Assembly (NCBI RefSeq): GCF_003918875.1
Contig: NW_025767162.1
Location: 558,001-622,000 of the forward strand
DNA length: 64,000 bases
Origin: Haliotis rubra
Taxonomy: Eukaryota
Direction of reading: 5' to 3'
Positions 12,251 to 59,210 of this stretch are shown piece by piece; within the stretch, counting starts at the first letter, position 1; every line of letters starts with the position of its first letter. A program made the translations under genes and the position numbers. The notes beneath the pieces are model-generated. The model searched no databases, was not told the DNA's origin, and worked only from the letters and a program-made list of their open reading frames with translations.

Positions 12251-15200
12251 ATGTCAAGGTAAGTCAGTATTTCGGACAACTGGTTATGAAACAATTAGGA
12301 AAATTATGCACATGTTTAAGAAAACTGGGCTTTTCATTTTTACGAAGAAAGAATATACATGCTTTCTGATGAGAATTTCGTTAAATAAGTTGGTTAAACG
12401 CAGGAATATATATACTAATTCGTAATATTATCTAAGCTTCAGTAAAAGCTGCAATGAATATTGTTTTCTGTGTTTAAAAAACGTGTCGTGGACCATTATT
12501 TGATGTGATGTCATCATCTATTGTGACGTCATCAATATTACGTCACATAAGGGCACTAATGGCATGTGCGTAACGTTAATGATAGTGATCGAAGCGTGAA
12601 ATCACTGTTTCACATGTTCGTTTTATCTTTTATCCTCTGGTTTGTCGTGAACGTATTGTTCATAAACGTTAATAAGAATATATGTCAACTTTATTCAAAT
12701 ATAACCAAAAAAATGAAGAATTATTTCTCGTGTATTCGTAAGTATTAATAGCGTGTTTCCTTGATCATCGAGTGTTTTACATCACACGAAAAGGTATTTT
12801 TGTCCATCTCAAACACGTCGAGTAAGACGTGCGGCGAGATTGTATTATGCCTTTTTATGATTTTTAATTTAATTCTTGAGGCCATTTTCGAGATATTTCG
12901 AATATCTGTTTTCACACTTCAGCATATATATTGCACATATTGAATTGTTTTTCATTGCTAGGTATATCTACATAGTCCTTGTGCTGCTTCCAACTGTTCG
13001 GTGTCAACCCAATGACCCAGACGCCACACCAGAGACTGTTGCTCTGTACAATCGCCTTAAAGAAATGGCAGTCAATCCAAACACTATCATGTTTGGCCAA
13101 AGTAGTTCCACATGGTTTGGGGCCACTGGAGGACACGCCCCTTATGACGTCACGACCAATACCAGCAATCGTGGGTGGACTTTCACCGTATGTCAGCTAC
13201 GTAAATGTTCCTGTTACTTTCCCGTTAAAGAGAAACTTCGATCCTTGACATAGCTCATTTTGCGTTTATGAGATTATTATAAATTTCTAAGAGGTAGTAT
13301 CATCAGTATAGGAGAATGATTCATAAATGAATGTTTGTGATTCAGTTGAAATTGTGCAATTGTCCCTAGATAGTTAGATATCTTTAGTGTTATACGTACA
13401 GGCTCAAATGACTCATACAGGTCAAAAGATACTTTGTTTTGTTGACCGCCTCCGTGGTGTAGTGGTTAGAGCGTCCGCCCGGAGAGCGGAAGGTCGCGGG
13501 TTCGATCCCCAACCGCGTCATACCAAAAGACGTTAAAATATGGTACTTGTTGGTCCCTGCCTGGCGCTCGGCATTAATGGGTACAACAAGGACTGGTCGG
13601 CTCGGAGTCAGTATAATGTGTCTGAGTGGGGTATTCATGCTTCTCAGTGGGCTAGCACTATAAAATCAGCTTCAGTCTGGGCTAGTACAAGCAGCCGCAC
13701 ATACACATACACACGCATGCACGTCGTCATATGAGTGAAATATTCTCAAGCACGACGATAAACCCAATTTCACCTCACCTCACCTCACCTTTGTGTTGTT
13801 TCTTGTTTAACGTCGCACTCAGAAATATCACAGCAACGTGACACCTTTCAGTAAATCATAGAATCAGAAGTAGACAATCCAGCAATTGGGATACGATGAC
13901 ATGTGTCAACCAGGTCAGCGAGCTTGACCACCCGATCCCTTTAGTCAGGTGTGACGGCAAAGTTTAAACCTGTTTCGTATGATTAACTAATCTGTCGTGT
14001 CATAGGGTGATCTTCAACATATTTTTAGAAGTAAATCGTATTCAAACCGCTCACATGACAGATATGATGCAGTGATAAATAATTGGAAGTCCTTTAATCT
14101 GTTTTTAATAGTGGGGCGGTGTGGTACCCTAAAGGATAAAGCATCTGCTCGACACGCCGAAGACCCGGGTTCAATTCCCCAAGTGGGTACAATGTGTGAA
14201 CCCCATTTCTGGTGTCCCCTGCCGTGATATTGCTTGAATACTGCTAAAAGCGGCGTAAAACCATACTCACCCAGTCAGTCACTCTTTTTGATACCCGTGA
14301 AGGTCTTTGTTAGAATGTGCCTTCAGTAACCCATGCTTGTCGTAAGAGGCGACTAACAGGATCGGGTGGTCAGGCTCGCTGACTTGGTTAACACATGTCG
14401 TCGGTTCCCAATTGCTCAGATCTATGCTCATACTGTTGATCACTGGATTGTCTGGTCCAGACCTAATTATTTACAGGCCGCCGCCATATAGCTGGAATAT
14501 TGCTGAGTGCTGCTCAAAACTAAACTCACTCACTCCCTTTTTGATAGTATATATTTCATTCCAGCTGGCATATCAGTTGGATGGGACCTAGTCCCCCTTG
14601 GCGTTAGTCGAGGTCCAAACAAGGCCAGGATTACTGTTAAAGTATTCACAATGACGACATGAGATATGTTAGGTCTGTGCAGCAGTCCGAAATATCACAG
14701 ATAGATCATGGTAGTTTGTAAATAATCTCCCCTGACCGAAGAGTGATTGAGTTGGGTTTTACGCCGGTGTGGTAGCCTAGTAGTTGAAACGTCCTTTTAG
14801 ACTGAGACTAATATAAGTAAAACTAGATACTTTTATCCTAGATAATGACAGTTATCGATATGATGTGGGCGGTGGGGTAGCCTAGCGGTTAAAGCGTTCG
14901 ATCGTCACGCCGAGACCCGGATTCCATTCCCCACATGGTTAAGTGTGTGAGGCCCGTTTCTGGTGTCGCCAGCCGTGATACTGCTGAAATATTGCTTGGA
15001 AGGTCGTAAAACTAAACTCACTAAGTCTTACTTACTTTAATATACATGTTTAGTTTAATGTCCTTGTATTCACGATTGCATAGTCTCGGAAAGACTCCAC
15101 GTTAACCATGACTGGCTAAATACAAAGATAAAACGATAGATCATGTATTTGTTCATGTTGTTCTGCAGGTCGACCAAGCCCTCGAGAACTACCCGGATGA

Positions 15201-16110
15201 GTTATCAGACGTGAAGGGTGTCACAGGTCAATACCCCGCCATCTTTGACCTTGGGATGTGGCAGCTGACCCCAAACAGAACCATCGTCCTGTCATACCTC
15301 CTGAAGAAAGCCCACAGCAGAGGAATCATCACCACATTGTGTCAGCACTTGTACAACCCAGTCACTGGCGGCAGTCCATGGGTTGACAAAGACCCTGGCA
15401 ACGTCACTCACACCGTCAGACGTCTTCTTCCAGGGGGAGACACGAACTGGAAGTACAGGGACAACCTGGACAAGATCACCGAGCTGGTCCTCAATCTGAA
15501 GGACGAAGAAGGAAAACTGATTCCTGTTCTCTTTCGTCCTCTTCATGAACTGAACGGAGACTGGTTCTGGTGGGGGTATGGTAACAGGGCGAACAATACC
15601 TTACAAGATCTGAAGTCCTTCTACAAGTACATCGTCACCTATCTCCGAGATGTTAAGCATGTCCACAACATCCTGTATGTCATCAGTCCAGACAAGTTCC
15701 AATCCAAGGATGACTATCTTCAATTTTACCCAGGGGATGATTATGTTGACATCATGGGAACTGATTTCTATTATAAATCTTCAAACGACACCACATCCGA
15801 TTTCCACAGAAGTTTAACAGATCTGGTGGAGATGGCAGAGTCCAGAAACAAAATTCCAACACTTTCCGAATGTGGAATGGCAAATAATGGGATCAGTACT
15901 GATCTCAACTTCTGGAATGACAAGATCCTTGATATCATCAAGGCCAGTATGACGACAAGAAGAATTGCCTACATCCTTACCTGGGCCAATCAGTGTACTG
16001 AGAATACATGTCAGCTGTGGACACCATACAAGGGACATCCAGCTGAACATGACTTCAGGAACAATTTCTTTAATGACCCTGTTACAGTTTTTGCAGGCGG
16101 CATGAACTGA
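12251..16110 (+). CDS. GH26 beta-mannanase-like secreted enzyme, copy 1 (subtype A), intact, ~391 aa; exons 12251-12258, 12962-13187, 15169-16110
   Basis: ATGTCAAG|gtaagt micro-exon; ttgctag|G acceptor (phase 2) gives MSRYIYIVLVLLPTVRC|QPND signal peptide; ACC|gtatgt donor and ttctgcag|GTC acceptor (phase 0). GH26 motifs QHLYNP, FRPLHELNGDWFWWG (acid/base Glu), YPGDDYVDIMGTDFY, PTLSECG (nucleophile Glu). Spliced length 1176 nt is in frame; AATAAA at 16161. Confidence 0.9.
13444..13788 (+). mobile_element. Family V SINE, copy 3 (intron 2 of GH26 copy 1)
   Basis: Near-identical to the other copies; TSD ctttgt(t/g)ttgtt. Confidence 0.85.
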
Positions 16111-20105: not shown

Positions 20106-23051
20106 ATGACGAGGTGAGACTAATTTGAAAACTGCATGTTTGTAATTTGAAGTTGTAGCAGTTTTAGGTTTAACCAGTAGACACTGAAATTATAATTCAG
20201 AAGTATATTGCAGTTACATTTTTATACAGTATACATGGATTGGCGAAAACATATGCGTGACAGATCAACCACATGGGCCACAAGAACTATGATCAAGGAA
20301 CTACTTTAACTACCCATCGTGACTCATCTTGGTAGAAGGAGTGAATGAGTTAAGATTTATAGTCACATCGGCAATAATTCAACCATATCGTGACTTTAAC
20401 AAATTACAGATTCATAATAAGTGCAAAGAAAGTATGAAAAACCTGTCGACGAAGGACAGTGAAATAACTAATAACTAGATTATCACAGATAGAGATGTAA
20501 AACTAGCGTGTAACTCTAGAATGAATCAAATTTATGAACAATTCATATATATATATATATATATTATTTCTATATATTGACTTTATATATAAAAACGTGC
20601 TGGAGATCACCAGCAACTGAAGGTTGATCACCATACTAGGGACCATGGGGACTTACAGTACCTTTGCTACCTGCATGGACCCTAGCTGGATTTATACCAT
20701 CCCTTCAGCCACTGGTGATTGTTGTGGAATTTAGCCATTATTTAAACATCATGTAAACAACAAATATTCTACGATTAACATTTTGTAGGTCGAAATTGAC
20801 TTTGAAAGTTTTGGGACTTACGAATCCTCCCAGGAGGTCTCATATTGGTAGATTTTTAACCGTGAATCTATTAAGGAAGGAAAAACAATATATGGTTGAA
20901 CAACGTTCAACCATAGGTTCCAACACTGTTATAAGCAAGTGATGTTTATGCATATCTTGTTATGCTTCCGTACTGACCCAACTTCTTTAAGGCATCTGAA
21001 AAATGTTACAACTGTTTCTAATAAAACACAAGCCATACACCACCGATCCCTTGAACAAACCGAAAGCAGCTAATTGTCACGAACAATATTTGAATATTTT
21101 CCCGGCCGGATATGACACAATCACATTTTCGTGAACATCTGGTATCACTGTTTGATTGTGATTCATAACCCGTGAAGATTCGGGTAACAATTGGTCTTCA
21201 GTAACCCATGCTTGTTGTAAGAGGCGACTAACGGGATCGGGTAGTCAGGCTTGCTGACTTGTTTCACGCATGTCATCATATCCCAGTTGTGCAGATCGAT
21301 GCTCATGCTTTTGATCACTGGATCTGGTACATACTCGATTATTTACAGACTGCCGCCGTGATCGTCCAATTGACTATGTGTTAGGCAGAGATTTCTCATG
21401 TATATGAAAAAGGTTTTGCCGCTTTTATTAGCAATTTCAACTGAAACCATCTTTTCTGGAGAGGTAGGACATATGTATTTGTTCTTCTGTCATGTTCTGG
21501 GGACAACACTTGTCCTGGCACCATGGTGTTTGAGTATCTTTGCTTTTCCAGACACTTCCTTTCTGTAATTATTCTCCTGGGGCCTGCCATGTGTGGTCCA
21601 GTAGATCAGAAGGCTACGCGGGAGACGAGGAACCTATTCAACAACATGAAAGATCTTGCTCGAAACTCCTCTAAAGTGATGTTTGGTCACCATGAAGACA
21701 CGTGGCTTGGCGCACAGGGTGGTCATCCGCCGTATTTGGTGCAGACTCTCACTCATGACGGAAACATACAGGCCTACATATTTTGGGCAAGTTAAACATC
21801 ATTTCACATTTGACCTCTGTTACGCGATACTTTTGTGTCAAATGAATCATTCTTACAAAAGAATCATGCATGTGTATTTTGTTGTCAGTCGATTTTGAAT
21901 TGGATATTATACGAGCTTTGAGTTGATCAAATTGTCAAATATGAACCATAATCTTGATGAACTCGTTGAAATGACGTTAGTCCTTCACCACTTTTGAAAC
22001 ATAAATCGTTTCAACAGATGGAGAACAAGGGGTTGGAGAGGCCGTTTTTACCATAAAAGGTTCATTCTGTGATGATGATATATATATTTTAGGCACAACA
22101 AGTCAGAGATGGGGATCCGGATGAACTCTCCGATACAAAAGGAGTTACTGGACAGTATCCTGCAGTATCTGGTTTTGACTTTGCTCAGTTCACTGATGAA
22201 CATATTATCACCCTTACCTATTTGGCAAAGCTTGCTTATGCTCGGGGGCAAATAGTCACGATATCGCAGCATCTCAACAACCCCGTGACTGGGGGTTCCC
22301 CTTGGGTCAGCAAGGATAATGGAGACGTTCTTCACACCGTCAGACGGATCCTTCCAGGTGGGGACAAGAACCACATCTATAAAGAGAATCTGGACAAGAT
22401 TGCCGACTGGGCTCTCAACTTCACTGACTCAAGCGGCAAACCAATTCCTTTTGTTTTCCGCATCCTTCATGAGCTAAATGGTGGATGGTTTTGGTGGGGA
22501 CTTTCAAAAGAGACCCAGAATACTGCGAATGATTTAATTAATCTGTACAGATACATCGTTACCTACTTAAGAGACGTAAGAGGCGTCCATAACATTCTTT
22601 ACTGCGTCAGCCCAGATAAATTCAAGACAAAAGATGACTACTTGAAAGTGTATCCAGGGATGACTTTGTTGATGTGCTCGGCACCGATTACTACTTCGTC
22701 AACGAGAATCAACCTCCTGTATCAGATCTGAAGAGAACCTTGGACGAACTGGTGGTGATTGCTGAAACCAGAGATAAAATCCCTGCATTGACGGAGACGG
22801 GAATCTTCAACAATGGTATCGATCGTGTACATAACTTCTGGAATGACCACGTACTGGACATTCTGAAGACCGACTCTAAAGCTGCAAGAATTGCTTATAT
22901 TCTTACCTGGACTAACCATTGTTATGGTAACCACAAGTGCGAGCTCTGGATGCCTTATAAAGGTCACCCTGCAGAGTCGGACTTTAGAAAGAACTTCTTC
23001 AATGATCCGATGACTTATTTTGCTGATCGAATTGGTGGAATGTACAACTGA
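20106..23051 (+). CDS. GH26 beta-mannanase-like copy 2 (subtype B), 1-bp deletion frameshift at ~22657-22659; exons 20106-20113, 21552-21786, 22093-23051
   Basis: ATGACGAG|gtgaga; ttttccag|A gives MTRHFLSVIILLGPAMC|GPVD; intron-2 donor is GC (TGG|gcaagt); attttag|GCA acceptor. Motifs RILHELNGGWFWWG and PALTETG. CCAGGGATGAC lacks one base relative to the paralogues (YPG-DD); spliced length 1202 = 3n-1; AATAAA at 23065. Pseudogene or sequencing error. Confidence 0.82.
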
Positions 23052-24173
23052 AAGAAATCATCAAAATAAAGTTATGTATTTATATATCAATTTATATTTG
23101 ATCTTTATTTCTCAGTATTTGAATTAAGAAAATGACAACTAATATTATGAATGACAACTTCCGGTTACTGAATGAGCATCATTACAATGTAGATTACTAC
23201 ACTGTTCTCAAGAGGAAATATTCACTTGAGCTTTGTAGAAAATGACGGCAACTTTTCAAGAAATATTACGAATGTGACTTGACGTTGGATCGGGGCTTTG
23301 TTTCCTCTAGGTATTTCTTTAAAATATGTTTTCGGTCACTTTCTCTGGATCACTTATTTTTCAATTGTTTGTAACTGATGCTAACTTGTAGATGTTCAAG
23401 ACTTATGGTAATTTAAGGAAAATATAGGTTAATGATTGATCTAAAAATGGACTATATGTGCAGTAAGTTAAAGAAAAAAATATTATTTTGTGTGAGTAAG
23501 TTAGCTGCTTTTAATGGCGGTAAGAACATTGATCCAGTTATATCACTGCGTGTAAGTCTACTGTGGAATGAAGGCTGGAAGAGACACAGGTCTCAATCGC
23601 TTGCCGCTATAGTGTAACTCCTTAAGGGCAGAAGACTGACCAGCAAGAAATCGGTACAAACTGATGTGCCAAAGGGAAACAACTCGAGTTCCGAAACCAA
23701 CAAATTAGAGTGAGTTAGTTAAAACTGAACGTCACGTGGCGAATGTCTCAAACCATATCATGACGAAACAAGACCACAAATAACACATGTGTTTAAAGAG
23801 TAGTTTTAAGACCATTCAAAGTATTAAAATATCAATTAACAACACAATATTAAAAGGAGCTAGGAATCGCGAGAACCAAAGCTAGGCTGCCTAACTAGAA
23901 ACTGTAGGGAGAAACCACTAGAGTTCTGACAGACAAAAATTTCTCACTGTGGCTGAATATAGGATTCGAACGATGATCAGAAGACATTTCGACAACTAGA
24001 GGACAAATCCGTGACGCGCCTTAGAATTCAACAGCTGGTTGTGGTTAAATAGACAACGATGAAGCATTTGCCCTAACCTAAGATGACCCGTCAGTTGTAG
24101 ATATGAAATATAATCCGACCAATTTAAGAAATGTTTAAAAGCTTAAATGTAATCTTATCCAAACATATCCATA

Positions 24174-24179
24174 TATAAA
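24174..24179 (+). promoter_or_regulatory. TATA box of GH26 copy 3 (equivalents at 40749-40754 and 52691-52697 on minus strand for copies 5 and 6)
   Basis: TATAAA/TATATAA conserved 52-55 nt upstream of the micro-exon ATG in three paralogues. Confidence 0.55.
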
Positions 24180-24225
24180 TAACACCCAAATCGACTAAAG
24201 CGCACAAGACAGTTGCCTTGGAAGG

Positions 24226-27200: not shown

Positions 27201-27634
27201 CTTCAAGGCTAAAGATGACTACCTCAGGGTGTATCCAGGAGATGACTTCTGTCGATATCATGGGCTCTGACCTCTACTACATGCATTCAAACCAGCCTCC
27301 AGTCTCTGATCTGAAGAGAACCTTGGATGATTTGGTGGACATGGCAGAGGCAAGGGATAAGATTCCAGCACTGACAGAAACAGGCATCATGCAGAATGGT
27401 ATTGATTCTGTACATAACTTCTGGAATGACCATGTCTTGGACATCCTGAAAACCGATTCCAAAGCAGCGAGGATCGCTTACATCCTGGCATGGGCCAATC
27501 GTTGTTCTGGAAACCATAAATGTCAGCTCTGGATTCCTTACAAAGGACATCCTGCCGAAGCAGACTTTAGGAACAATTTCTTTAATGATCCCATGACCAT
27601 GTTTTCAAACCAGATCGATGGCATGTATAACTGA
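24226..27634 (+). CDS. GH26 beta-mannanase-like copy 3 (subtype B), 1-bp insertion frameshift at ~27250; exons 24226-24236, 25670-25907, 26674-27634
   Basis: ATGGACGTACG|gtagga; tcaacag|G gives MDVRNIPVIALVFLTTTQC|EPID; ACG|gtaagt; tttcag|GAG. RPLHEQNGGWFWWG, PALTETG. GATGACTTC(T)GTCGAT has an extra T compared with copies 5/6; spliced length 1210 = 3n+1; AATAAA at 27725. Confidence 0.85.
24538..24972. repeat. 44-bp minisatellite x10 in intron 1 of GH26 copy 3
   Basis: Unit ttcgtccactga(g/a)tatgacattaacctgttagttagtaccccgg, head-to-tail with no spacers. Confidence 0.95.
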
Positions 27635-43360: not shown

Positions 43361-43482
43361 CATCTGTATGATCCCCAGGGAGTTGAGATTGACAATACGA
43401 TGTTCCGTTGAGATTGACATCCAGTGAACGAGGGAAAAACAAAGCGCCTTTGAGCAGCTGAGCTGAGCTGGATATCGGCGCT

Positions 43483-43725
43483 NNNNNNNNNNNNNNNNNN
43501 NNNNNNNNNNNNNNNNNNNNNNNNNNNNNNNNNNNNNNNNNNNNNNNNNNNNNNNNNNNNNNNNNNNNNNNNNNNNNNNNNNNNNNNNNNNNNNNNNNNN
43601 NNNNNNNNNNNNNNNNNNNNNNNNNNNNNNNNNNNNNNNNNNNNNNNNNNNNNNNNNNNNNNNNNNNNNNNNNNNNNNNNNNNNNNNNNNNNNNNNNNNN
43701 NNNNNNNNNNNNNNNNNNNNNNNNN
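43483..43725. other. Assembly gap (243 N)
   Basis: Run of N. Confidence 1.
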
Positions 43726-47422: not shown

Positions 47423-50400
47423 TCAGTTGTACATACCACCGATCTGGTTTGCAAATATAGTCATAGGATCATTGAAGAAATTGTTCCTAAAGTCTGCTTC
47501 GGCAGGATGTCCCTTGTAAGGAATCCAGAGCTGGCATTTGTGGTTTCCAGAACAGCGGTTGGCCCATGCCAGAATGTAAGCTATCCTTGCTGCTTTAGAA
47601 TCGGTTTTCAAGATGTCTAGGATGTGGTCGTTCCAGAAGTTATGTACAGAATCAATACCATTCTGCATGATGCCTGTTTCTGTCAGTGCTGGAATCTTAT
47701 CCCTTGCCTCTGCTATGTCCACCAAATCATCCAAGGTTCTCTTCAGATCAGAGACTGGAGGCTGGTTTGGATGCATGTAGTAGAAGTCAGTGCCCATGAT
47801 ATCGACGAAGTCGTCTCCTGGATACACCTTAAGGTAGTCATCTTTAGTCTTGAACTTATCTGGGCTGATGCAATACAGAATATTGTGGACACCTCTTGTA
47901 TCTCTTAAGTATGTCACGATATACTTGTACAGGTCTTTCAGATCATCCGCCGTATTCTGAGTTTGGGGAGAGAGGCCCCACCAAAACCATCCTCCGTTTT
48001 GTTCGTGAAGAGGTCGGTAGATAAATGGAATTAGATTATCACTGGAGTCGGTTAGGTTGAGAGCCCAGTCAGCAATCTTGTCCAGGTTCTCCTTGTATTT
48101 CAGGTTATGGTCTCCTCCAGGGAGGATTCTTTTAACTGTATGAAGAACATCCCCTGAATCTTGATTCACCCATGGAGCCCCACCAGTGACGGGGTTGTTG
48201 AGATGCTGGGAAAGGGTAATAACTTGGCCTCTTGCATGAGCAAGCTTGGCCAAGTAGGTTGTGGTCACGGTCTGGTCATCTTGAAATTGAGAAAAGTCAA
48301 AACTAGACACAGCTGGGTATTGTCCTGTTACACCTTTGGTGTCCGACAACTCATCGGGATAGCCAGACAGTGCCTGTTTCTCCTGAAAAAAATATCTTTA
48401 GTTTTTGACAAATTTAAATAGAAACAGACATTCGAGAACGGCCAGTCTAGATTGCCGCACGGAAAATGTATTTCATTGGGACCCGAAGGCAGTTTACTGG
48501 CGATAATTACATAAATCCGTAATAATCACGAAACATATGAAACAGTCCTTTTCCAGTGATAACTCATTATGGATATGAAAAAATGTCACTTGGTATAAAA
48601 ACAAAACAATTATATTGGCTTAGATGTGCATCAAAATGCATTGCCTCGAATCCAAAAAAGGTACACAGTTAATGATAATGTAATGCTGGCGTAATGTCCT
48701 GATGAATACAGTCAAAAACTGAAGTTGAAGGAACCCACGTGAACGCCTCGCGAGATCAGAGATTTTAAGGGAATATATATTAATGGACACGCTTGTGATT
48801 TACTATACGATATGCCGTAGGAAACACAATATATCTATGGGATTTCTCTTTGTTAGATTCCCGTCCCATGGATATTGAACCCTTGAAGATCCGGGTTAGA
48901 ATTGATCTTCAGTAGCCCATGCTTGTCGTAAGAGGCGACTGACGGCATCGGGTGGTCAGGCTCGCTGACATGGTTGACACATGTCATCATATCCCAATTC
49001 CGTAGATCGATGCTCAGGATGTTAATCACTGCATTGGCTGGTCTAGACTCGATTATTTACAGACCGCCGCCATATAGGTGGGATAATGCGGCGTAAAAAT
49101 ACACTCACTCACTCATGGATATTTCGAAGACCTACCGAAAAGGTGTATCCGTGCACATTGCCGTCGTGACTCAGCGTCTGAAACAGGTATGGAGGATGCC
49201 CTCCCTGAGCCCCCAGCATTGTGTCAAAATGATGACCAAACATCACCTTGGAGGAGTTCCTAGCCAGGGCTTTGATGTTCTTGTACAGATTTTTAGTCTC
49301 CACAGTAGCATGCTGATCAATTGGCTCACACTGCGTCGTTGTGAGAAAGACGAGAGCTATAACCGGTATGTTCCTGTTGAAAAATAACAGTATTTTGGCA
49401 TTATGGACCATATGGATGCGCGGTGGTCTTTAAGATTAGTCAACCTACTTGTGTTGCTGATTGCATTCGATTGATGTAATGATCACCGATCCACGCCAAC
49501 GTGGATTTGTGAAATTGGGCTTAACGTAAAAGTTGTATTCCATATATAACGCCGTACATGGATGTGTTTGTATGACAGTACTAGTCCAAACTACGACAGT
49601 GATGCACGTGCTGCTGCATCAGTGACAAAAATTATGTCCGATGCAATCCCTATTTTGACTAGTATCATATTTTCCCGAATTATATCAGGTGAACAATGGA
49701 CTAGACTCTGCATACGTTTAAGACGGGTGCCACCGGTGGGGCAAGATACGCTCACCTTTTCGCGAACACCTGGTATCATCACCATTTTAGTGATTCATAA
49801 GCACATGGTCTGTCATCGTATTACATCTAAATGATGCTGTCTGTAAACAAATTAGCTATCAAAGAGGTGGAATGAGATGAGGCTTATTGTCGTGTTCCAT
49901 GTTATTGCACTTATATAACGACGTACATTGATGCGTGTTTGTATTTTTCTACTAGTTCAGCACGTTTTATAGGGAGACACCATTTCGGTAAGGTAACCTT
50001 GTGGTTACAGTGTCCGCTTATTTGAATGATTGATTTAAATTATATATTTTATTTATTCACAAATATAAGGGATTGGGCACAGGTTATCCAACTTAAAATA
50101 CTCGCTCCCTAATATTTACATACGTGCATTTGCAATTTTATACATTTTAGGTAGGAATAGAGAGAAAGTATAAGGAAAGTTTAAGAGAGGATAAGAAGGG
50201 ACAACTTATATGATCACTCAAGAACCAAGTAACGTTAATGTCTCTCTTTGAGTGTACAGTTTAAAATCGCATACGAAGTGATGTATAATTTCACAAGCAT
50301 TTCCACAGTAACAAAAAGCAGAATCGTTCATGTTGAAACGATACAGGTCATACTTTAGCTAACCAGTCATATATCTCATATAACTATAATATTTAATTGT

Positions 50401-52642
50401 ATAATTTGTTATAGTAGTGTGTTTTTTGTAAGTTGTAATATCACATTGATTAACTGATAGTTAATATGGGTCACAAAGTTTTGAGTGTGGGTTTTGGTTC
50501 GCATCTCGCATCATGTATGTCCAATTACACTAGTATTTAGTAATACAGCCATTTACTGCAAGTACAACCCTAATTCGCTTAGGTAGGGTAGAATACAGTG
50601 ATTTGATGTACTCTTGAGTGAATGATGTACAGGTACCTTGAACGTGATGCATCAGATCCTGCTTGGTTTAAATTTCATGTAACTGTCTTTGTAACCTGAT
50701 TGTCAGAGTTCTCCATACATTTTCAATTATATTATGTACAGTCTGGGGACTGAGGAGGCCAATTCTTTGTCTGAATGTCATTCTCACGTTTCCACTGAAT
50801 TGTCTGTCAGACAAGGAAAATTGTCCTCTTGAGATATATAGCCCCGATGTGCTGGAACTTTGCCCATTATTGGCCAGTATATCTATATAATTTGTAGAAT
50901 TGATATAACCATCTACATCAACACCTTCAAACCCGTGAAGGTCCGGTGTAGAGGGCGCAAGAGTCGATATAATGCAACGTTGCATTAATTCCTTCGAACT
51001 TTTCAATTTAATATTGTAATCTAATACGTAATTTTGTTTGGGTATACATTATGTGGTAGCTTCCCTGAGGGCTGATAGTTGGTATTATTGAGAGAAATGC
51101 ATTATTTTTTTATAGAGATATCTCGTGTGACGTTGTGCCTTTAATGCTGTTGATGTACCCGTGAAGATCCGGATTAGAATTGATCTTCAGTAAGCTTGTC
51201 GTAAGAGGCGACTAACAGGATCGAGCGGTCAGGCTCGCTGACTTGGTTGACCCATGTCATCGGTTCCCAACTGCACAGCTCATGCTGTTGATCACTGGAT
51301 TGTCTGGTCCAGGCTCAATTATTTGCAGACCGCCGCCATAGAGCTGGAATATTGTTAAGTGCGGCGTAAAACAAAAGTCACTCACTCACTTCAACACCTT
51401 CAAAACAAATACACCCCTAGAACATCACACTGAGACGTGGATAATTTTTATCCATGCACACACCAAGGCACCGGGGTTTCCACTATTCTTCATTAATCCT
51501 CCAAACATAAACTTTCTAATCTTTTCCTACAACAACTTGACTCTCATCTGAAAATATTACCCGTGACCAATCTCTATTTACATTCTATCTGAAATGTGTT
51601 CTTGCAAAGGCTCTTCTCTTGAACCTGTTTTGAGAGGATATGGTGAAAGTGAATGACTCTGATGAGTTAATGTTTTAGATTTGTGACCCAGTATTTTAGA
51701 TTTGTAACTCAAATGCATTGTACTAGAAATCTGTCATTTATTGTAACCTTGTTCGTGATCTATTCAATATTCGGTATCAGGAATATTATTCCATAATCTT
51801 ATAGTTGATGGAACAAAGAAAACATACGAATGTCTTAATCAGTCAGGATGTAAGATAATATTGTTAGCATTCCGAAGGTTATAACTAGATATCTCGATTC
51901 CAAATTATCTGTAGTTATATCTTTTAAGTATACAGGAGCTGAATTATTTCGAATTTTATAAAATAGACAAAGCGTTCTTAATTTTCTTCGTTCATCTAGT
52001 CTTTTCCATCATGTCTCATACCTAACGACAAATTATAATATTATATCTAGGAAGACCCGTAACTATTCTTGTAGCTTCTAACTGAAGTTTCTCTAAGTTT
52101 TCCTTATGTTGTACGGTACAACCACCCACACCCACACCCACACCCACACCCACACCCACATCCACACCCACACCCACAAGCATATTCAAAGCGTGATGTG
52201 AAATGTATTCCATTAAACATAAACTGGAACGGCTGTGGAGCTGACAAACATAGAAACATAATCGGGGCGAGCAAAGGTTCCAGGTCACAGGTCAATATGT
52301 CACACCCACTGAACGAAACTCTACACACAAAGTTGCTGTGTTTTAAACGAATGGGTGACCTTGGCCTTTCCATATAAGGAACGACAATTATTTGCTAAAT
52401 GTTGTAATGAGGTACAGTAGAAAAATCTACTAATTTATAGAAATCTGTAAAATGCTTTCACCACCTTTGTAAACTTTTCAAAACTTCGCCCAATTTGTAT
52501 TTCATTATTTCTGTATGATAAAATACACAAATAGTTGATTATACATCTGTTTACATGAAAATACTTAGATATTCTAAATGCAATCGTACATCTTTCTAAT
52601 GATTTTGAAATAATAAAGTCCATTTTCCTACCGTAAGTTCAT
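47423..52642 (-). CDS. GH26 beta-mannanase-like copy 6 (subtype B), intact, ~402 aa; exons 52642-52632, 49373-49136, 48382-47423
   Basis: Minus strand: ATGAACTTACG|gtagga; ttcaacag|G gives MNLRNIPVIALVFLTTTQC|EPID; TCG|gtaggt; tttcag|GAG. RPLHEQNGGWFWWG, PALTETG. 1209 nt in frame. Confidence 0.9.
50040..52120 (-). mobile_element. CR1-type LINE 3' remnant interrupted by a Tc1-like relic (related 3' end at ~54860-55500); ends approximate
   Basis: LEKLQLEATRIVTGLPRY and following CR1-like C-terminal residues; shared terminal sequence tttattcaca...ttatccaacttaaa..cgctccct at ~50052 and ~54866. Confidence 0.55.
50500..51620 (-). mobile_element. Tc1-like transposase relic; ends approximate
   Basis: FSDESQVV...VWR in broken frame at ~51550-51490 and IIENVWRTL at ~50720; interrupted by an insertion with TSD tcaacaccttcaaa. 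Confidence 0.6.
52123..52177. repeat. (CACACC)n microsatellite; (TG)/(CGTG)n also at 41781-41845
   Basis: Visible directly. Confidence 0.9.
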
Positions 52643-52950
52643 CCTTCCAATAGGCAACGGTCTTATGTGTTCTATTCTATTTAGGTTTTGTTATATATGA
52701 ATATTTCTGGATAAGATTAAATTGAGGTTGTTACCTATGTTTTTAAAACATACATGTTGAGGTCAGGTCATCTCTGATATCTATCGGGTCATCATATATA
52801 CAGGGCCATCCAAGGTTACGGCTGATGATTGGTAGTAGGGTTGTGTTGCCGGCCAAATGTCATCTTATGAAGGATTCGATTCCCAGCTACAGACACATTC
52901 ATGTACTTTGTCTGTTGGAACGCTTGTGATTTCTCCCCTCTGTCCCTAGT

Positions 52951-53413: not shown

Positions 53414-54990
53414 GGCGGCTTTACTTAGGTTGCTGGCAATCACTAGCTCCATTTTGTGTTCTTAATTGATATTCTATTATTTTGAAAGCTCTTGAACTAG
53501 TTTTTGAAAAATATGTGACCATCCCGCTATTATGCTGTTTTTCGACTACAAGATTATACTCAGGTTCCATATAAATATATGTATTCTTTATGTGTGATTC
53601 ACGATACTCTTACATGTATATCATGCATTGAACATTAAAACATGACTTAAAAAGGATAGCCTACACAAGCGTAATATATCACATATAGGCATATGACTGG
53701 TTCAAGAAAACTGAAATTAGGACGATTTGTCAGCGATTCAATCGGAAGCATTATCTTCAAAGGCCACCGTAAGGGACATTGGGGACAAGCGTTATAGCTG
53801 TATGGTATTCTAGCACTTGTTGTGGAGAAAATCAAGTCAGTGCAAAAAACTAAAATCAGTGCAACGATGAAGATTGTAGTTTTATGTGAAAGTACTTTGA
53901 TATGATCTTACATAGATTATCACCCGTTAAGATCCGGGTTAGAATTGATATTCAGCAACTCATACGTGATCGCATCCCAATGGCGTAGATTTTCTCGTCC
54001 AGACTCTATTATTTACAGACCGCCGCCATATAGCTGGAATACTGCTGAGTGCGGCATTAAACAACAAACCAACCAACATAGATTATCGTCTCATAGGGAC
54101 AGCTAGTTTACGCTCTAACTTAAGGATATTTATCAACCTGAACAACCTTGGAATATTCCACATTTGTTATCTGTAAGGAACCTTCACCACAACTCATCTT
54201 ACTGAGAGATGGGAACATTTTCTGTTTGTGCACATGGTCTGTATAAGAATAGTTTCAACTATCTCTTATATGCCGGCCAGGTTAACAGACATCGGAATGG
54301 CAATCAGGTACCAGCGATACATTATTTCTATTTTACTTGACGTAAACTTCCATTTAAATTATTCTGTTGACATTGACATTTCTCTCTTAAGGGAGTTGTT
54401 TTCAAATAATTATGTACTTATATTTTCAGAATAGGACCGTTTTCATTAGATTAAACAATAATCATTGCGATGACATCCTAACCATGTGGGGGCGATGGGG
54501 TAGCCTAGTGGTTAAGGCATTCGCTCGTCACGCCGAAGACCCGGGTTCGATTCCCCACATGGGTAAAATGTGTTAAGCCCATTTATGGTGTCCCCCGCCG
54601 TGATATTGCTGGAATATTGCTAAAAGTGGCGTAAAACCGAACTCACTTACTAGCCATTTGTTCATGAATTACTAGACTAAAGCTTAGTCCCTCGATCTAT
54701 ACATAATTTTGATAAATATACCCATTTGAATTTAAGGGCTTTAGCATTGCAGAGGGCTAGGCGGTAGTACACTACATGGAAATAATGTGGTTCAGGGACT
54801 GTGAGATAGACTGATGAATTACTGTCACCTAGTGATGATACAGGGTGTTTTGATTTAAACATATTTTATTCACAATTGTGAAAGAGGTTGGGGACAAGTT
54901 ATCCAACTTAAATATCCGCTCCCTGGTGTTTACATGAATGCATTTTCACTATTATACAAATTAGCAAGGAATAGAGAGAAAGTGTAGGCG

Positions 54991-55232
54991 TGAGTGAGTT
55001 TAGTTTTACGCCGCACTCAGAACTATTCCAGCTATATGGCGGCGGTCTGGAAATAATCGAGTCTGGGCCAGACAATCCAGTGGTCAACAGCATGAGCATC
55101 GATCTGCTCAATTGGGAACCGATGACATGTGTCAACCAAGTCAGCGAACCTGACCACTCGATCCCGTTAGTCGCCTCTTACGACAAGCATGGGTTGCTGA
55201 AGATCAATATTCTAACACGGATCTTCACGGGT
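54991..55232 (-). mobile_element. ~240-bp short retroposon starting ACCCGTGAAG (family P); other copies ~413-593, 3910-4030(-), 9618-9847, 10297-10525, 14293-14536, 21168-21360, 48879-49113, 51157-51390, 53922-54077, 57935-58145(-)
   Basis: Many dispersed copies with shared ends, (ACTC)n tail and TSDs (ctttttgata at the 14.3-kb copy; catggatatt at the 48.9-kb copy). Confidence 0.85.
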
Positions 55233-57028
55233 CAGGAAGTGTATGAACGTTAGAGAGAGAACAGAGGAAGGGACACAACTTAAGTTATTACTCAAAAACG
55301 TTTTGATTGATAAATGCAAGTTTGTACACACTTGGAAACATATTCATTCTGTTGAATAGTCATATCTGCACTTCCAAGTAACATTAATAAAATATTGTAC
55401 AATGCGGTTCTATCTTTGTCTACCTTTGAATGTTGTACAGTTTACATTCTAAAAGGAAGTGATGTACAGGTTCACAACTTTTACCGGAGTAACATAGTCT
55501 AGTTGTCTTGTGTAAATACAAGGTGTTTGCGACGAAGTGTGCGACTCGTCACAAACACATGCAACGACAAAGAAACTTGATACATGAAGTAACACGTGGA
55601 TATATGCTTATGTCCGTCTTCGGACACCATGAAACCCCCAATGTTTGTCTTGTCATTGCGAGTCATTTTGATAGTTATGATGAAATATTAAAAAGAAATA
55701 TTTGTATCCAAGTTGAAAAAGGCTCTTTAAGCCATACAGGTTGTACTGTGAACCTTTGTCTAGAATAGAATGTATTTCTTGTACATTTTCCAAGATTTCA
55801 AGGAGCCTCACAAGAATTTGGCTCAGATGTTCGTTTAATCAAAGTTACAAAATCCATGGTCTCATTAAAGCTTTCAAAGGTCCAATGGAACACATGAGGA
55901 AAATACTATCAAATTTGAAGTGCAGAAACGATGTTCGATGGCAGGCTGAAGTGGATGGCACTGGCCATATTTCTTATCATTGCATCATATTTTGAGAAAC
56001 AAATTTATATTTTAGTGTGAGGTGTTAGCCCTGTAGTGAGTGAGTTAAGATTTAAAGTCACATCGGCAATATTTCAGCCATATCGTGACTAAAACTAGTT
56101 CTAAATTTATAATACATACATATATATATAAAACCCTGTCAGTTGACAGATTGAGTTTAGCTAGCATATATCTTTAAAAGTAGAAAATTATTTGTGGACA
56201 GTACAATGTAAAATTGGGCTATAGATCGCCAACAACTGAGTAGAACACCATACTAGGGATAGGGACTTACAGTGCCTTTTACCCGTGAACTGTTAGCCCT
56301 GTACAATTGGTAGAACATGCATATTAACATAAACAGACATAAATTTCTTGACGTTTAAGCTATGAATTACAAGGAGGGTGAGTTCTGTACTTGTACTGTA
56401 TTTACTAGTTTTACTTTGACATCTGTGATTAAATAGTTGTTTTACAGTTCTTCAGTTCATCGAGTCCATTTCTGGTGTCCCCCGGGCTTTTAATTGCTAA
56501 AAGCGGCGTAAAAACAAAACTCAGTCAGTCAGTCCTCATTTTCTTGATCTTTAATATGTTAACTAATTATTTCCGTTACGATATGGCTGAGATATTACTG
56601 ATGTGACGATAAATATTACCTCACTCACTCTGCTCTTAAATGCGATGCAGTGGCGCCATTCGAATGATAGCTTTGTCCGTTTAATAATGATTTTAGTTTC
56701 TTGTCCCCAAAATAGAACAATTTAAAGTGACGCGACACAAGTGTCATGATTTTCAGCTTGGATCTGTGTGTGTTTTGTTTTTGTTGCATGTATTTGTGCA
56801 GATGTTCATTTCCACTGCACTGTCAGTACTAAGTGCCTACCCATGATGAGACGACATACGGGATCGGATGGTTGATGCATGTCCCTGTCATGTAGACTGA
56901 TGATGAAGATGTCTATCAACACCGCCACGTAGCTGTAATATTGGAGTGCCGCGTTACACAACACTCAGACTGTTTTTGTCCTATTTCGATTGCAGGGCAA
57001 CTTCTTGGTCATGTATTGTTCCTTACAG

Positions 57029-59210
57029 AACGAGGGTTCACAGTTTTCGCCAGTATTGCCTACATCTCTACCCACGGACCAGCAAGTCATAGCAACCATC
57101 GAGTCTTGGAAATGAGAAGGAGTCTCCACAGGATCGGGCAGTGCAGTGGATCAGAACCTTCTGATGATGGCCGCGTTAAACAACATCTGTGACTATTTTT
57201 GTCCAACACCTTTTATGTTTGGGCATGGTCCACCAGAACCTTCTGATGATGACTTTATGTTTGGTCATGGCGTGGACTGGTTCATCCGGTGGCCACGCCC
57301 CGTACGACATCCTTACTAACACTAGTGATAAAGGCTGGACATATACAGTATGTATCTACTTAACGATGTCCACTCATACATTCGTGAACTGTTCTATACA
57401 TATACATTTTATGATTGAATTTAATCTCATGTATATACCTTGAGCACCATCCATACAATGTGATCCCAATGCGATTCCTGGTCCCATGCAGCTAGACCTC
57501 ACAGTTTGTAAAGAAAGAGTAATAGTTATGTAGAGATTCCGGATACGAATATATGCCCCCAGAAAATATGTTTTCGTATCGTATGAGGAAGCCAAATGAA
57601 GTGGGCGGTTTGGCTCGATGACACGATTAAGGGCATATTGCTCTATCCAGACGTTCTTTGCTCATAACATCCATCACTGGATGTTCTGGTTCAGATTTGT
57701 GTATATACAGTCGTATTCCTATAGTTTAAATATTCCTGAGTGCGGTGTTACACAACGAACATGGAATACAACATGCGTAGACAAATGCGTACTGCATGAT
57801 TACACATGGTATTATTGTTTAGTATAGATGAACAGTTCATTGAGGCCATAACAATTTCATTGAAGGAACACATCACTGGTTGTGAGCTCAATCACAGATC
57901 AGTGTCACATTCTTTTTTGGGGTGTTTTCATGGTGTTTAACGTCGAGCTCAGCGATATTCCTGATATTTGGCGTCAGTCTGTAAATAATCAAGATTAGGC
58001 CAGACAATCCGGTGATGAGCATCGATCCACACAATTAAGATACGATGACATGTGTCAACCAAGAGGCGACTAACGATCCCGTTAGTCGCCTCTTACGACA
58101 AGCATGGGTTGCAGAAGGCCAATTCTAATCCGGATCTTAATGGGTCTCAAGGTGTTTACAGCTATCGTTCATGTTTTACATCGACCAACTCAGTTAAAGT
58201 AGGAAACAAAGTAGTCCTACCGTAGTGATACATATTTGATTCATTGACAGGTTGAACAGGCTTTGAAAGATTATCCAGATGAGTTGTCTGACGTGAAGAG
58301 CGTGACTGGCCAGTATGCAGCAGTAATCGACTTTGGGCTCTGGCAGTTGAGTGATGACAGAAGGATAATTCTGTCCCATCTTATCAAGAAGGCCCACAAG
58401 CGAGGTTTGATTTCAACCCTGAGCCAGCACCTGTTTAACCCCGTCACTGGTGGAAGTCCATGGGTGGAAGACGACAACGGAACTGTCCTCCATACCGTGA
58501 GGCGTCTCTTACCAGGAGGAGACTTCAATTGGAAGTACCAGAAGAACCTTGACACGATCGCCGATATTGCTCACAACCTGACAGACGACCAAGGAAAGCT
58601 TATCCCTGTTCTCTTCAGACCTCTTCATGAGCTTAATGGAGACTGGTTTTATTGGGGATTGGGAAATAAGGTTCAAAATACAGAAGATGATCTGAAATCA
58701 TTTTACCGATACATAGTTACGTATCTACGTGATCGAAAGAACGTTCACAACTTCCTGTATGTCTTCAGCCCGGACAAGTTCAAGGATAAAACAGATTACC
58801 TCAAAGTGTACCCCGGTGATGACTACGTTGATGTTATTGCCACCGATTTCTACTACAAGACGCCACAAGATAAGACAAGTGACTTTCACACAGCAGTCAA
58901 ACACGTTGTGGAGATAGCAGAGTCCAAGAATAAGATAGCTGCTGTGTCAGAGGCTGGGCTGTTTAACAATGGCATTGATACAGAGACTAATTTCTGGTTT
59001 GATAAAATCCTTTCTGCGATAAATGGTGACCCGATTACTCGGCGTGTTGCATACATCCTCACATGGGCTAATCAATGCAATGACAATCACTGTTCGGTGT
59101 GGGTTCCTTACAAAGGTCATCCTGCTGAAAATGACTTCAGAAGATACTTCTTTAACGATCCCATGACCCTGTTTGGAAGTGATATCCCAAATATGTACAT
59201 CCCTTCTTAA
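57029..59210 (+). CDS. GH26 beta-mannanase-like copy 7 (subtype A): intact catalytic exon 58251-59210, disrupted exon 2 (~57029-57347); possible pseudogene
   Basis: ACA|gtatgt donor at 57348 after GGHAPYDILTNTSDKGWTYT (homologous to copy 1); ttgacag|GTT acceptor; RPLHELNGDWFYWG, YPGDDYVDVIATDFY, AAVSEAG; AATAAA at 59306. The upstream part of exon 2 is frameshifted and locally duplicated; first exon not identified. Confidence 0.8.

What the first reader, a model, noticed from the sequence alone, without database searches (positions are those of the whole stretch)
12251..59210. Intron-containing, secreted GH26 beta-mannanase gene array in an animal genome: candidate domesticated bacterial HGT for algal mannan digestion
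Seen: seven paralogues with GH26 clan-A motifs (HLxNP, RxLHE[L/Q]NGxWF[W/Y]WG acid/base, YPGDD[Y/F]VD, [S/T]E[C/T/A]G nucleophile), signal peptides, GT/GC-AG introns and poly-A signals, embedded among SINEs/LINEs. Established: GH26 is mainly bacterial and fungal; HExNGxWFWW is typical of GH26 mannanases rather than the GH26 beta-1,3-xylanases; characterised mollusc mannanases are GH5; some red and green seaweeds have beta-1,4-mannan walls. Inference: a bacterial GH26 was transferred into an algivorous invertebrate lineage, gained introns and expanded into a digestive-enzyme cluster. I cannot confirm from here whether this is already described.
Basis: partly seen in the sequence, partly recalled or inferred. 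Interest (0 to 1): 0.92.

Follow-up and report, generated by a model that had tools for sequence, protein, structure and literature searches.

The report
Abalone GH26 mannanase gene cluster
This stretch of blacklip abalone (Haliotis rubra) chromosome carries six tandem copies, three of them intact, of a secreted mannan-digesting enzyme gene that molluscs probably took from a bacterium-like donor before chitons, snails and bivalves diverged; the genes are real and already auto-annotated, but their origin does not seem to have been written up.

Summary
Window 12251-59210 holds six GH26 (PF02156) genes plus one decayed relic, with all the quoted motifs, poly-A signals, GT/GC-AG introns and surrounding transposons. 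The genes have three exons, not two: a tiny first exon carries the ATG.

The window is Haliotis rubra. [quoted passage not shown] Only c1, c4 and c5 are intact. c2 and c3 each carry a 1-nt frameshift, 10 nt apart. c6 has a decayed exon 1. The N gap (43483-43725) is intergenic and touches no exon.

The HGT idea is partly right, but the event is far older than proposed:
- GH26 genes from a chiton, four gastropod orders and six bivalve orders form one clade (bootstrap 100).
- They share two inserts, and a phase-0 intron at one alignment column in the five genera mapped.
- No other animal phylum appeared in four large searches.
- The best tree nests molluscs inside prokaryotic GH26, but an AU test does not reject a sister position (p = 0.36), and the donor is unresolved.

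The predicted fold and catalytic Glu pair match bacterial beta-mannanases such as CjMan26A. The substrate is untested. This is a moderately interesting new example of a known kind.

The parts
12251..16110 (+). GH26 gene c1, apparently intact, 391 aa. Exons 12251-12258, 12962-13187, 15169-16110. N-terminus MSRYIYIVLVLLPTVRC then QPND.
   Evidence: Exon 0 found by alignment to the H. cracherodii orthologue. The assembled CDS has no internal stop. Exons 1-2 match NCBI protein P0490 exactly. PF02156 E 4e-40.
20106..23051 (+). GH26 gene c2. Exons 20106-20113, 21552-21786, 22093-23051. Intron 2 is GC-AG. A 1-nt deletion near 22659 in the YPGDD codons gives a premature stop at 22731.
   Evidence: NCBI model P0484 (293 aa) ends at the shifted stop. 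The downstream frame is otherwise open.
24146..27634 (+). GH26 gene c3, with its TATA-type promoter motif at 24146-24182. Exons 24226-24236, 25670-25907, 26674-27634. A 1-nt insertion near 27251 gives a premature stop at 27270.
   Evidence: NCBI model P0011 (281 aa) matches 100%. dN/dS downstream of the shift is 0.09 against c5.
28375..28708 (+). Decayed GH26 relic. Only residues of about 96-162 and 346-407 are recognisable, in two frames.
   Evidence: tblastn at 47-56% identity.
31988..40782 (-). GH26 gene c4, intact, 413 aa (402 aa from the second ATG). Exons 40733-40690, 33572-33335, 32947-31988. Promoter motif at 40746-40782. Intron 1 (7.1 kb) holds a LINE insertion.
   Evidence: Exact match to NCBI protein P0481. 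Promoter motif. LINE endonuclease domain at 36347-36832.
43483..43725 (.). Assembly gap (243 N), intergenic between c5's 3' end and c4's promoter. Its content and true length are unknown.
   Evidence: No GH26 similarity within 2.5 kb on either side.
47423..52723 (-). GH26 gene c5, intact, 402 aa. Exons 52642-52632, 49373-49136, 48382-47423. Promoter motif at 52687-52723. N-terminus MNLRNIPVIALVFLTTTQC then EP. Catalytic Glu210 (acid/base) and Glu318 (nucleophile).
   Evidence: Exact match to NCBI protein P0482. Motif. Catalytic residues from the alignments. Model pLDDT 93.6.
54297..59210 (+). GH26 gene c6. Exon 0 (54297-54307) and exon 2 (58251-59210) are intact. Exon 1 (about 57053-57347) is decayed: about 140 nt of extra sequence, an in-frame stop, a short duplication and a frameshift.
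   Evidence: NCBI model P0008 (353 aa) starts at an internal Met and lacks a signal peptide. Exon 2 dN/dS is 0.07 against H. asinina.

Best explanation
The region is a tandem array of nuclear GH26 genes in the blacklip abalone Haliotis rubra.

Product and chemistry. Each intact gene (c1, c4, c5) is transcribed from its own promoter; a conserved TATA-type motif is visible upstream of c3, c4 and c5. The transcript is spliced from three exons and polyadenylated. It yields a protein of about 390-413 residues with a cleavable N-terminal signal peptide and one (beta/alpha)8 GH26 catalytic domain. Inferred from the family's well-studied chemistry, the enzyme is a retaining beta-1,4-mannan hydrolase. 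It uses Glu210 (HE motif) as acid/base and Glu318 (TE[T]G motif) as nucleophile, in c5 numbering. It is most likely secreted by the digestive gland to cut dietary mannans or glucomannans from algae and detritus.

Evolution. The array belongs to a mollusc-wide family that descends from one ancestral gene. That gene was most probably acquired from a prokaryote before crown molluscs diverged. It then gained two clade-specific inserts and a phase-0 intron between them. It split into several old paralogue lines and expanded in tandem in abalones before Haliotis species separated. Abalones added a second, phase-2 intron inside the signal-peptide codons.

Shown versus inferred. Shown: family, gene structure, fold, catalytic residues, mollusc monophyly, the shared intron, purifying selection. 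Inferred: secretion, tissue, substrate, direction and age of the transfer.
For: Family and fold
- PF02156 at E 1e-40 to 1e-44.
- HMMER to solved GH26 mannanases: 4yn5 at 3e-50 and CjMan26A (1j9y) at 5e-47, with the HE and SE/TE catalytic motifs aligned.
- AlphaFold model pLDDT 93.6, pTM 0.92.
- Best PDB matches are CjMan26A, CjMan26C, Bacillus JAMB-750 Man26, Muricauda GH26C, BoMan26A and CfMan26A, with TM (by target length) 0.78-0.88 except CfMan26A at 0.69. GH26 lichenases and beta-1,3-xylanases follow far behind.

Host integration
- Exact three-exon models with GT/GC-AG introns.
- Poly-A signals and transposons between copies.
- Orthologues lie on 49-106 Mb chromosome scaffolds of H. asinina and H. 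cracherodii, with c1 then c2 in the same order.

Selection
- dN/dS is 0.06-0.09 against H. asinina orthologues.

One mollusc clade
- 39 mollusc rows form one clade at UFBoot 100 / SH-aLRT 100, on a stem of 0.43 substitutions per site.
- The phase-0 intron sits at alignment column 96 in Haliotis, Patella, Lottia, Littorina and Mizuhopecten.
- Inserts of about 19 and 9 residues are shared and absent from 11 bacterial homologues.

Prokaryotic affinity
- Three word-index searches and one exhaustive HMM search of 1.84 billion representatives gave only molluscs above the prokaryotic hits.
- The best ML tree nests molluscs 12 nodes deep in prokaryotic GH26. Supports on the nearest nodes are 95/67 and 97/94.

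Expression hints
- NCBI models include isoforms.
- A scallop GH26 is reported as hepatopancreas-expressed (PMC7560691).
- A metagenome contig carries an intronless, caenogastropod-like full-length ORF that looks like spliced mRNA.
Against: - The AU test does not reject a tree in which all 53 close prokaryotic sequences form one clade apart from molluscs (delta lnL 7.9, p = 0.36). Nesting, and hence direction, is favoured but not significant. The UFBoot run had not fully converged.
- The donor is unresolved. The sister group is a mix of Bacillota, Actinomycetota, Cellvibrionaceae and Asgard MAG sequences.
- Non-mollusc eukaryotic GH26 were not in the tree. One AlphaFold-DB cluster hit at 29% identity has an accession style typical of marine-protist transcriptomes.
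- No activity, tissue or splicing data for H. rubra itself were available. There is no signal-peptide predictor here, so secretion rests on inspection.
- Half of the copies are damaged in this assembly.
- The characterised abalone mannanase is a different protein. It belongs to GH5 by my own knowledge; the only reference seen is. The GH26 genes are therefore not needed to explain known mannanase activity.
Confidence: 0.72

Rival explanations
1. Vertical inheritance. GH26 of this subtype was present in an early eukaryote or animal ancestor and was lost everywhere except in molluscs. No gene transfer into animals occurred.
For: The AU test allows molluscs to be sister to, rather than inside, the close prokaryotic group. 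The gene is very old within molluscs. Some protists and fungi do have GH26.
Against: No other animal phylum appeared above prokaryotic hits in four large searches. Solved fungal and protist GH26 are far more distant than bacterial ones: E 1e-8 to 1e-13 against 1e-47 to 1e-50. The outgroups beyond the close group are also bacterial. This reading would need dozens of independent losses.
Confidence: 0.15
2. Recent or repeated transfer. An abalone or algivore ancestor, or several mollusc lineages independently, took up bacterial GH26 genes.
For: Abalone copies are only 40-43% identical to Littorina copies, about the same as to bacteria. Taken alone, that could suggest separate origins.
Against: All mollusc sequences form one clade at 100/100. 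They share two inserts and one phase-0 intron site. Littorina's nearest relatives are other molluscs, not bacteria. Paralogue lines c1, c2, c4/c5 and c6 each have orthologues in other Haliotis species.
Confidence: 0.03
3. The enzymes act on a substrate other than beta-1,4-mannan, such as mixed-linkage glucan, beta-1,3-xylan or a mollusc or microbial glycan. Alternatively, they serve a non-digestive role.
For: GH26 also contains lichenases and beta-1,3-xylanases. The mollusc-specific beta-hairpin insert of about 28 residues (pLDDT 69-74) could alter the cleft. The family is kept in filter feeders as well as grazers. One Patella copy has Lys in place of the acid/base Glu.
Against: All near structural and sequence neighbours are characterised beta-mannanases or mannobiohydrolases. 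The lichenase and xylanase branches score much lower: Foldseek E 1e-9 to 1e-13 against 1e-29 to 1e-33. Residues invariant across the mannanase-type alignment are kept.
Confidence: 0.15
4. Bacterial contamination or mis-assembly rather than animal genes.
For: None beyond the bacterial affinity of the protein family.
Against: Spliceosomal introns at conserved sites, poly-A signals, animal transposons between copies, GC content of 36-45% like the flanks, and orthologous arrays on chromosome-scale scaffolds of other abalones.
Confidence: 0.01

Closest known systems
Cellvibrio japonicus CjMan26A (PDB 1j9y, 1gvy, 2whm) and Cellulomonas fimi CfMan26A (2bvt): bacterial GH26 endo-beta-1,4-mannanases
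   Same: Same Pfam family and (beta/alpha)8 fold: TM by target 0.82-0.85 for CjMan26A and 0.69 for the longer CfMan26A chain, at about 30% identity. The HE acid/base and xE(x)G nucleophile motifs align.
   Different: The abalone proteins are encoded by spliced nuclear genes and have a eukaryotic signal peptide. They carry two clade-specific inserts near the N-terminus (about 19 and 9 residues), lack an 8-residue bacterial segment, and have no CBM. Their activity is untested.
CjMan26C (2vx4) and Bacteroides ovatus BoMan26A (4zxo): GH26 mannobiohydrolase-type enzymes
   Same: Equally close in fold (TM by target 0.85-0.88) and in sequence (E 2e-43).
   Different: Whether the abalone enzymes are endo- or exo-acting cannot be read from these data. 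The loop that blocks the -3 subsite in those enzymes was not examined.
Abalone endo-beta-1,4-mannanase HdMan of Haliotis discus hannai (Ootsuka et al. 2006, cited in PMC5159873) and other characterised mollusc mannanases
   Same: Same presumed substrate, organ and animal group.
   Different: To my knowledge those enzymes belong to GH5, a different family of the same clan GH-A. This was not tested here. The GH26 genes are a second, uncharacterised set.
[quoted passage not shown]
   Same: The same gene family. The window's six genes are themselves NCBI models for H. rubra.
   Different: That survey gives counts and tissue only. Origin, intron conservation, the inserts and the abalone array were not analysed there.
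[quoted passage not shown]
   Same: A polysaccharide hydrolase of bacterial type fixed in an animal genome and used, or presumed to be used, in digestion.
   Different: Those are young, lineage-restricted transfers. This one is phylum-wide and probably of Cambrian age or older, with introns and deep paralogy.

Membership tests
Glycoside hydrolase family 26 (CAZy GH26 / Pfam PF02156) | Significant match to the family profile above the curated threshold | tested here: met
   138-151 bits against a cut-off of 20.2 for c1, c4, c5 and c6. The precomputed PF02156 domain is listed for all homologues.
Glycoside hydrolase family 26 (CAZy GH26 / Pfam PF02156) | Clan GH-A (beta/alpha)8 barrel | tested here: met
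   AlphaFold model pLDDT 93.6. Foldseek E 4e-33, and TM (by target length) 0.78-0.88 to six of the seven nearest solved GH26 enzymes (0.69 to CfMan26A). The structure is predicted, not solved.
Glycoside hydrolase family 26 (CAZy GH26 / Pfam PF02156) | Two catalytic glutamates: acid/base in the H-E motif after strand 4, nucleophile after strand 7 | tested here: met
   The HE(Q/L)NG and (S/T)E(C/T/A)G motifs align with the corresponding motifs of CjMan26A. Both Glu (E210 and E318 in c5) are invariant in the 50-sequence alignment. E318 is invariant and E210 nearly so in the other alignments. All six window copies have them.
Glycoside hydrolase family 26 (CAZy GH26 / Pfam PF02156) | Retaining hydrolysis of beta-1,4-mannan (EC 3.2.1.78) for the mannanase subgroup | not testable with these tools
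   Inferred from the nearest characterised relatives only.
Animal gene of horizontally acquired prokaryotic origin | Physically part of the host genome: introns, host repeats, host flanks, orthologous loci in related species | tested here: met
Animal gene of horizontally acquired prokaryotic origin | Phylogenetic nesting of the animal clade inside donor-group diversity with statistical support | tested here: inconclusive
   The best ML tree nests molluscs, with nearest-node supports of 95/67 and 97/94. The AU test does not reject a non-nested tree (p = 0.36).
Animal gene of horizontally acquired prokaryotic origin | Absence from other animals and close outgroups | tested here: inconclusive
   Only mollusc names appear above the prokaryotic hits. 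Most database hits are unnamed, only the best 120-150 rows are shown, and eukaryotic protist GH26 exist.
Animal gene of horizontally acquired prokaryotic origin | Evidence of expression and function in the host | tested here: inconclusive
   Strong purifying selection, dN/dS 0.06-0.09. Literature reports scallop hepatopancreas expression. A transcript-like intronless contig exists. No H. rubra RNA data were accessible.
Secreted protein (classical signal peptide) | N-terminal basic residue, hydrophobic core of 10-12 residues, small residues before the cleavage site | tested here: inconclusive
   Seen by inspection in c1-c5. The N-terminus is low-confidence and helical in the model. The mature start aligns with the start of the bacterial mature domains. 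No predictor was available. c6 lacks this peptide.

The most novel reading that the evidence does not exclude
The mollusc GH26 clade records a single transfer from a prokaryote to a stem mollusc, of Cambrian age or older, that has not been formally described. Its clade-specific beta-hairpin insert of about 28 residues hosts the conserved phase-0 intron. On this reading the insert reshapes the substrate cleft and gives a specificity, for example for algal mannans, that bacterial GH26 enzymes lack.
Probability: 0.15. Interest if true: 0.6.

Novelty: new member of a known kind. Interest (0 to 1): 0.42.

Why it matters
If the transfer reading holds, GH26 joins the short list of bacterial-type carbohydrate hydrolases fixed in an animal phylum. 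Unusually, this would be at the base of a whole phylum rather than in one insect or nematode lineage.

It offers a dated case of intron gain, paralogue birth and death, and possible concerted evolution in a foreign gene. The shared intron and inserts predate the splits among the lineages that carry them.

Practically, it points to an uncharacterised second mannanase system in farmed abalone, scallops and mussels. That system may bear on feed formulation with mannan-rich seaweeds or plant meals.

It does not change any established view. The genes are already annotated, and the family has been counted in molluscs.

Tried and rejected
- The search of earlier findings, by place and by words, returned nothing.
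- Rfam at gathering threshold gave no hit in the window, so the 160-nt repeat could not be typed.
- I looked for the MTO1/GidA neighbour that flanks the array in H. cracherodii. Only repeats matched in window 1-12250.
- My first two-exon models lacked start codons for c1, c3 and c4. I dropped them once the tiny first exon was found through H. asinina and H. cracherodii loci and confirmed by exact NCBI protein matches.
- Seven literature searches found no paper treating mollusc GH26 as a transfer, and no biochemical characterisation. The abalone gonad paper's 'ManA' could not be tied to GH26.
- The two-domain bacterial proteins of about 690 aa that out-scored single-domain hits did so only by summing two GH26 domains. 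P0343 (2457 aa, four GH26 stretches) probably scores for the same reason.
- Contamination and repeated-transfer readings were rejected, as set out under the rival explanations.
- The AU test meant to prove nesting did not reach significance. I report it as such.

Full report
**What is there**

The window has a uniform animal-like GC content of 36-45%. Translating the long ORFs between 12 and 60 kb gives repeated proteins of about 300 residues. Four of them hit Pfam PF02156 (Glyco_hydro_26) at E 3e-40 to 5e-44. tblastn with one copy, and with related abalone proteins, finds six full copies and one short relic. All the quoted motifs are present in the translations.

**Identity of the genome**

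The best database hits are Haliotis proteins. Two NCBI Haliotis rubra proteins match the window at 100%: P0008 to c6 and P0011 to c3. Cluster members P0481, P0482/P0483, P0484 and P0490 are the H. rubra models for c4, c5, c2 and c1. [quoted passage not shown] The window is therefore blacklip abalone, and every gene here is already an automatic RefSeq model.

**Gene anatomy**

An exact protein-to-genome search reproduces the NCBI proteins. It shows three coding exons, not two.
- A tiny first exon carries the ATG plus 5-8 further coding nt. In the NCBI model of c4, which starts at an upstream ATG, it has 44 coding nt.
- This exon is joined by a phase-2 intron to an exon of about 235 nt that finishes the signal peptide.
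- A phase-0 intron then joins that to a last exon of about 960 nt.

I found the first exon by comparison with the H. asinina and H. cracherodii loci. For c1 it is at 12251-12258, exactly the finding's start. Its assembled CDS is open for 391 codons.

Other gene signals:
- c3, c4 and c5 share a 37-nt TATA-type motif 40-50 nt upstream of the conserved ATG of exon 0, against 0 matches expected by chance.
- Introns are GT-AG, except c2 intron 2, which has GCAAGT.
- AATAAA follows each stop within 14-96 nt.

Between the genes lie a LINE endonuclease/RT remnant, a Tc1-like transposase, a Harbinger-type transposase and at least eight copies of a 160-nt SINE-like repeat shared with H. cracherodii.

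**State of the copies**

c1, c4 and c5 are intact.
- c2 lacks one base and c3 has one extra base, 10 nt apart within the YPGDDFVD codons. The NCBI models end at the resulting stops.
- Neither change is in a long homopolymer. The frames are otherwise open, and c3's downstream part still shows dN/dS 0.09. These are therefore very recent lesions or polishing errors between 90%-identical paralogues. The same assembly underlies the NCBI models, so they are not independent evidence.
- c6 keeps exon 0 and a perfect exon 2 (dN/dS 0.07 against H. asinina). Its exon 1 has about 140 nt of extra sequence, an in-frame stop, a short duplication and a frameshift.
- The relic at 28375-28708 retains only two short homologous stretches.

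**The assembly gap**

The gap at 43483-43725 lies 2.7 kb beyond c4's promoter motif and 3.7 kb beyond c5's stop. No GH26 similarity is nearby. No exon or frame crosses it, and the 'ORFs' over it are runs of X. Its length and content are unknown, and I did not try to fill it.

**What the protein is**

HMMER against PDB sequences gives Bacillus JAMB-750 Man26 at 3e-50, CjMan26A at 5e-47, CfMan26A at 1e-45 and CjMan26C at 2e-43. The HE and xE(x)G catalytic motifs align. Fungal PaMan26A (1e-8), a termite-protist enzyme (7e-13) and the CtLic26A lichenase (1e-6) are far weaker.

An AlphaFold model of c5, built from a 50-sequence alignment, has pLDDT 93.6. Foldseek ranks the same bacterial mannanases first, with TM by target 0.78-0.88 (0.69 for CfMan26A). 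Lichenases and beta-1,3-xylanases follow much later.

Both catalytic glutamates (E210 and E318 in c5) are invariant in the 50-sequence alignment. E318 is invariant and E210 nearly invariant in the other two alignments. The exception is one Patella protein with Lys at the acid/base position.

N-termini such as MNLRNIPVIALVFLTTTQC|EP look like classical signal peptides. The mature start aligns with that of the bacterial enzymes. A secreted retaining beta-mannanase is therefore the best functional reading. Substrate, endo or exo mode and tissue are inferred.

**Where it came from**

Homologues named by their sources occur in:
- a chiton (Liolophura);
- patellogastropods (Patella, Lottia), vetigastropods (four other Haliotis species) and caenogastropods (Littorina, Batillaria);
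- bivalves of six orders (scallops, Mytilus, Pinctada, Mactra, Mercenaria, unionids).

Next come bacterial and Asgard MAG proteins at 33-42% identity. An exhaustive profile search of 1.84 billion representatives again put only mollusc representatives on top. The exceptions were one unnamed four-domain metagenome protein, and named identities were checked only for the top ranks.

I fetched 80 named prokaryotic loci and four distant plasmid-borne GH26 genes, three of which served as the outgroup of the 95-row tree.
- A 145-row quick tree recovered one mollusc clade at SH-aLRT 100.
- A 95-row careful tree under LG+C20+F+G4 recovered it at UFBoot/SH-aLRT 100/100, on a stem of 0.43.
- In the careful tree the clade sits 12 nodes inside the prokaryotic sequences. 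It is sister to a mixed Bacillota/Actinomycetota/Cellvibrionaceae/Asgard group (95/67), then to Hydrogenedentota (97/94).
- An AU test does not reject the alternative in which the 53 close prokaryotic sequences form their own clade (delta lnL 7.9, p = 0.36).

Nesting and the donor are thus suggestive only.

**Independent rare-change characters**

The phase-0 intron falls at the same alignment column (96) in Haliotis, Patella, Lottia, Littorina and Mizuhopecten. Mollusc proteins share two inserts flanking that site, which 11 bacterial homologues lack. Littorina has five further introns, scallop one, and abalones the extra phase-2 intron. This fits stepwise intron gain after a single origin.

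Taken together, the family is vertically inherited within Mollusca from a gene already present before the sampled lineages diverged. Its restriction to molluscs among animals, and its much closer kinship to prokaryotic than to solved fungal or protist GH26, make an ancient transfer from a prokaryote the best explanation. I put this at about 0.7-0.75. Ancient eukaryotic descent with massive loss is the main rival.

**History of the array**

The c1, c2, c4/c5 and c6 lines each pair with orthologues in H. asinina, H. cracherodii or H. rufescens. Synonymous sites between these lines are saturated. The tandem expansion therefore predates the Haliotis radiation. H. cracherodii keeps c1 then c2 in the same order.

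c3, c4 and c5 are closer to each other (dS 0.15-0.24) than to their H. asinina counterparts (0.35-0.43). This points to gene conversion or later duplication. Abalones also hold more distant GH26 paralogues at other loci (P0014, P0238, P0245).

**Comparison with what is known**

A 2020 survey lists GH26 counts for seven molluscs (Lottia 4, Chlamys farreri 1 with hepatopancreas expression, Pinctada 1, none in oyster, two mussels and octopus). It does not discuss origin (PMC7560691). Searches of the held library found no paper on a mollusc GH26 transfer or enzyme.

The existence of the genes is therefore known. The evolutionary reading and the abalone array's anatomy appear not to be. This is a further example of a known kind of event, bacterial-type CAZymes in animals, notable for its depth.

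**Verdict**

Interest is moderate.

Noticed in passing
window 22659 (c2) and 27251 (c3): Two independent 1-nt frameshifts, -1 and +1, fall 10 nt apart in the same YPGDDFVD codons of neighbouring paralogues. Chance for two random sites in a 960-nt exon is about 2%. Selection signatures downstream are intact. Possibly a polishing artefact between near-identical copies.
   Followed up: partly
P0009 (Patella vulgata), alignment A4 columns about 219-224: This limpet GH26 has HKLNG instead of HELNG, so the acid/base glutamate is replaced by lysine in an otherwise conserved protein.
   Followed up: no
L092:33-1238 (JGI sample 3300021294, 1356-nt contig): An intronless full-length ORF, 56% identical to Littorina GH26, with the mollusc inserts and a Kozak-like start. 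It spans all six Littorina intron sites. It looks like a spliced snail mRNA captured in an environmental data set. It groups inside the caenogastropod clade in the tree.
   Followed up: partly
window 40049-40209, 54489-54652, 14112-14273, 11147-11303, 11695-11844, 14867-15022, 39013-39165, 16237-16357: A SINE-like repeat of about 160 nt, 76-89% identical to a copy in H. cracherodii (L091:9506-9666). No Rfam family matches it.
   Followed up: partly
window 24146-24182 (+), 40746-40782 (-), 52687-52723 (-): A conserved 37-nt motif containing a TATA box (…CATATATAAATAA), 40-50 nt upstream of the conserved ATG of exon 0 of c3, c4 and c5, and also in H. asinina. It is a likely core promoter of this paralogue group and was not found upstream of c1, c2 or c6.
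   Followed up: partly
window c3/c4/c5 exon 2 against L001 (H. asinina): Paralogues c4-c5 have dS 0.145. That is lower than any orthologous pair with H. asinina (0.35-0.43), which suggests gene conversion or independent recent duplication in each species.
   Followed up: partly
L091:10001-90598 (H. cracherodii): The NCBI model of the c1 orthologue spans 80 kb, because its last exon lies 78 kb from exon 1. This is either a huge intron or an assembly or annotation problem.
   Followed up: no
P0124, P0240, P0242-P0244 (metagenomic, about 690 aa): Prokaryote-like proteins with two tandem GH26 catalytic domains. They scored above single-domain bacterial hits only because the two domains add up.
   Followed up: partly
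AlphaFold DB cluster hit A0A7S2GLN7: A 521-aa 'GH26 domain-containing protein (Fragment)' at 29% identity. Its accession style is typical of marine-protist transcriptomes. Eukaryotic protist GH26 of this subgroup may exist, and they were not placed in the tree.
   Followed up: no
window 29011-31151 (-), 45025-45519 (+), 36347-36832 (-): Tc1/mariner-like transposase pieces (DDE_3, HTH), a Harbinger-type DDE_Tnp_4 ORF and a LINE endonuclease domain. The LINE sits inside intron 1 of c4.
   Followed up: partly
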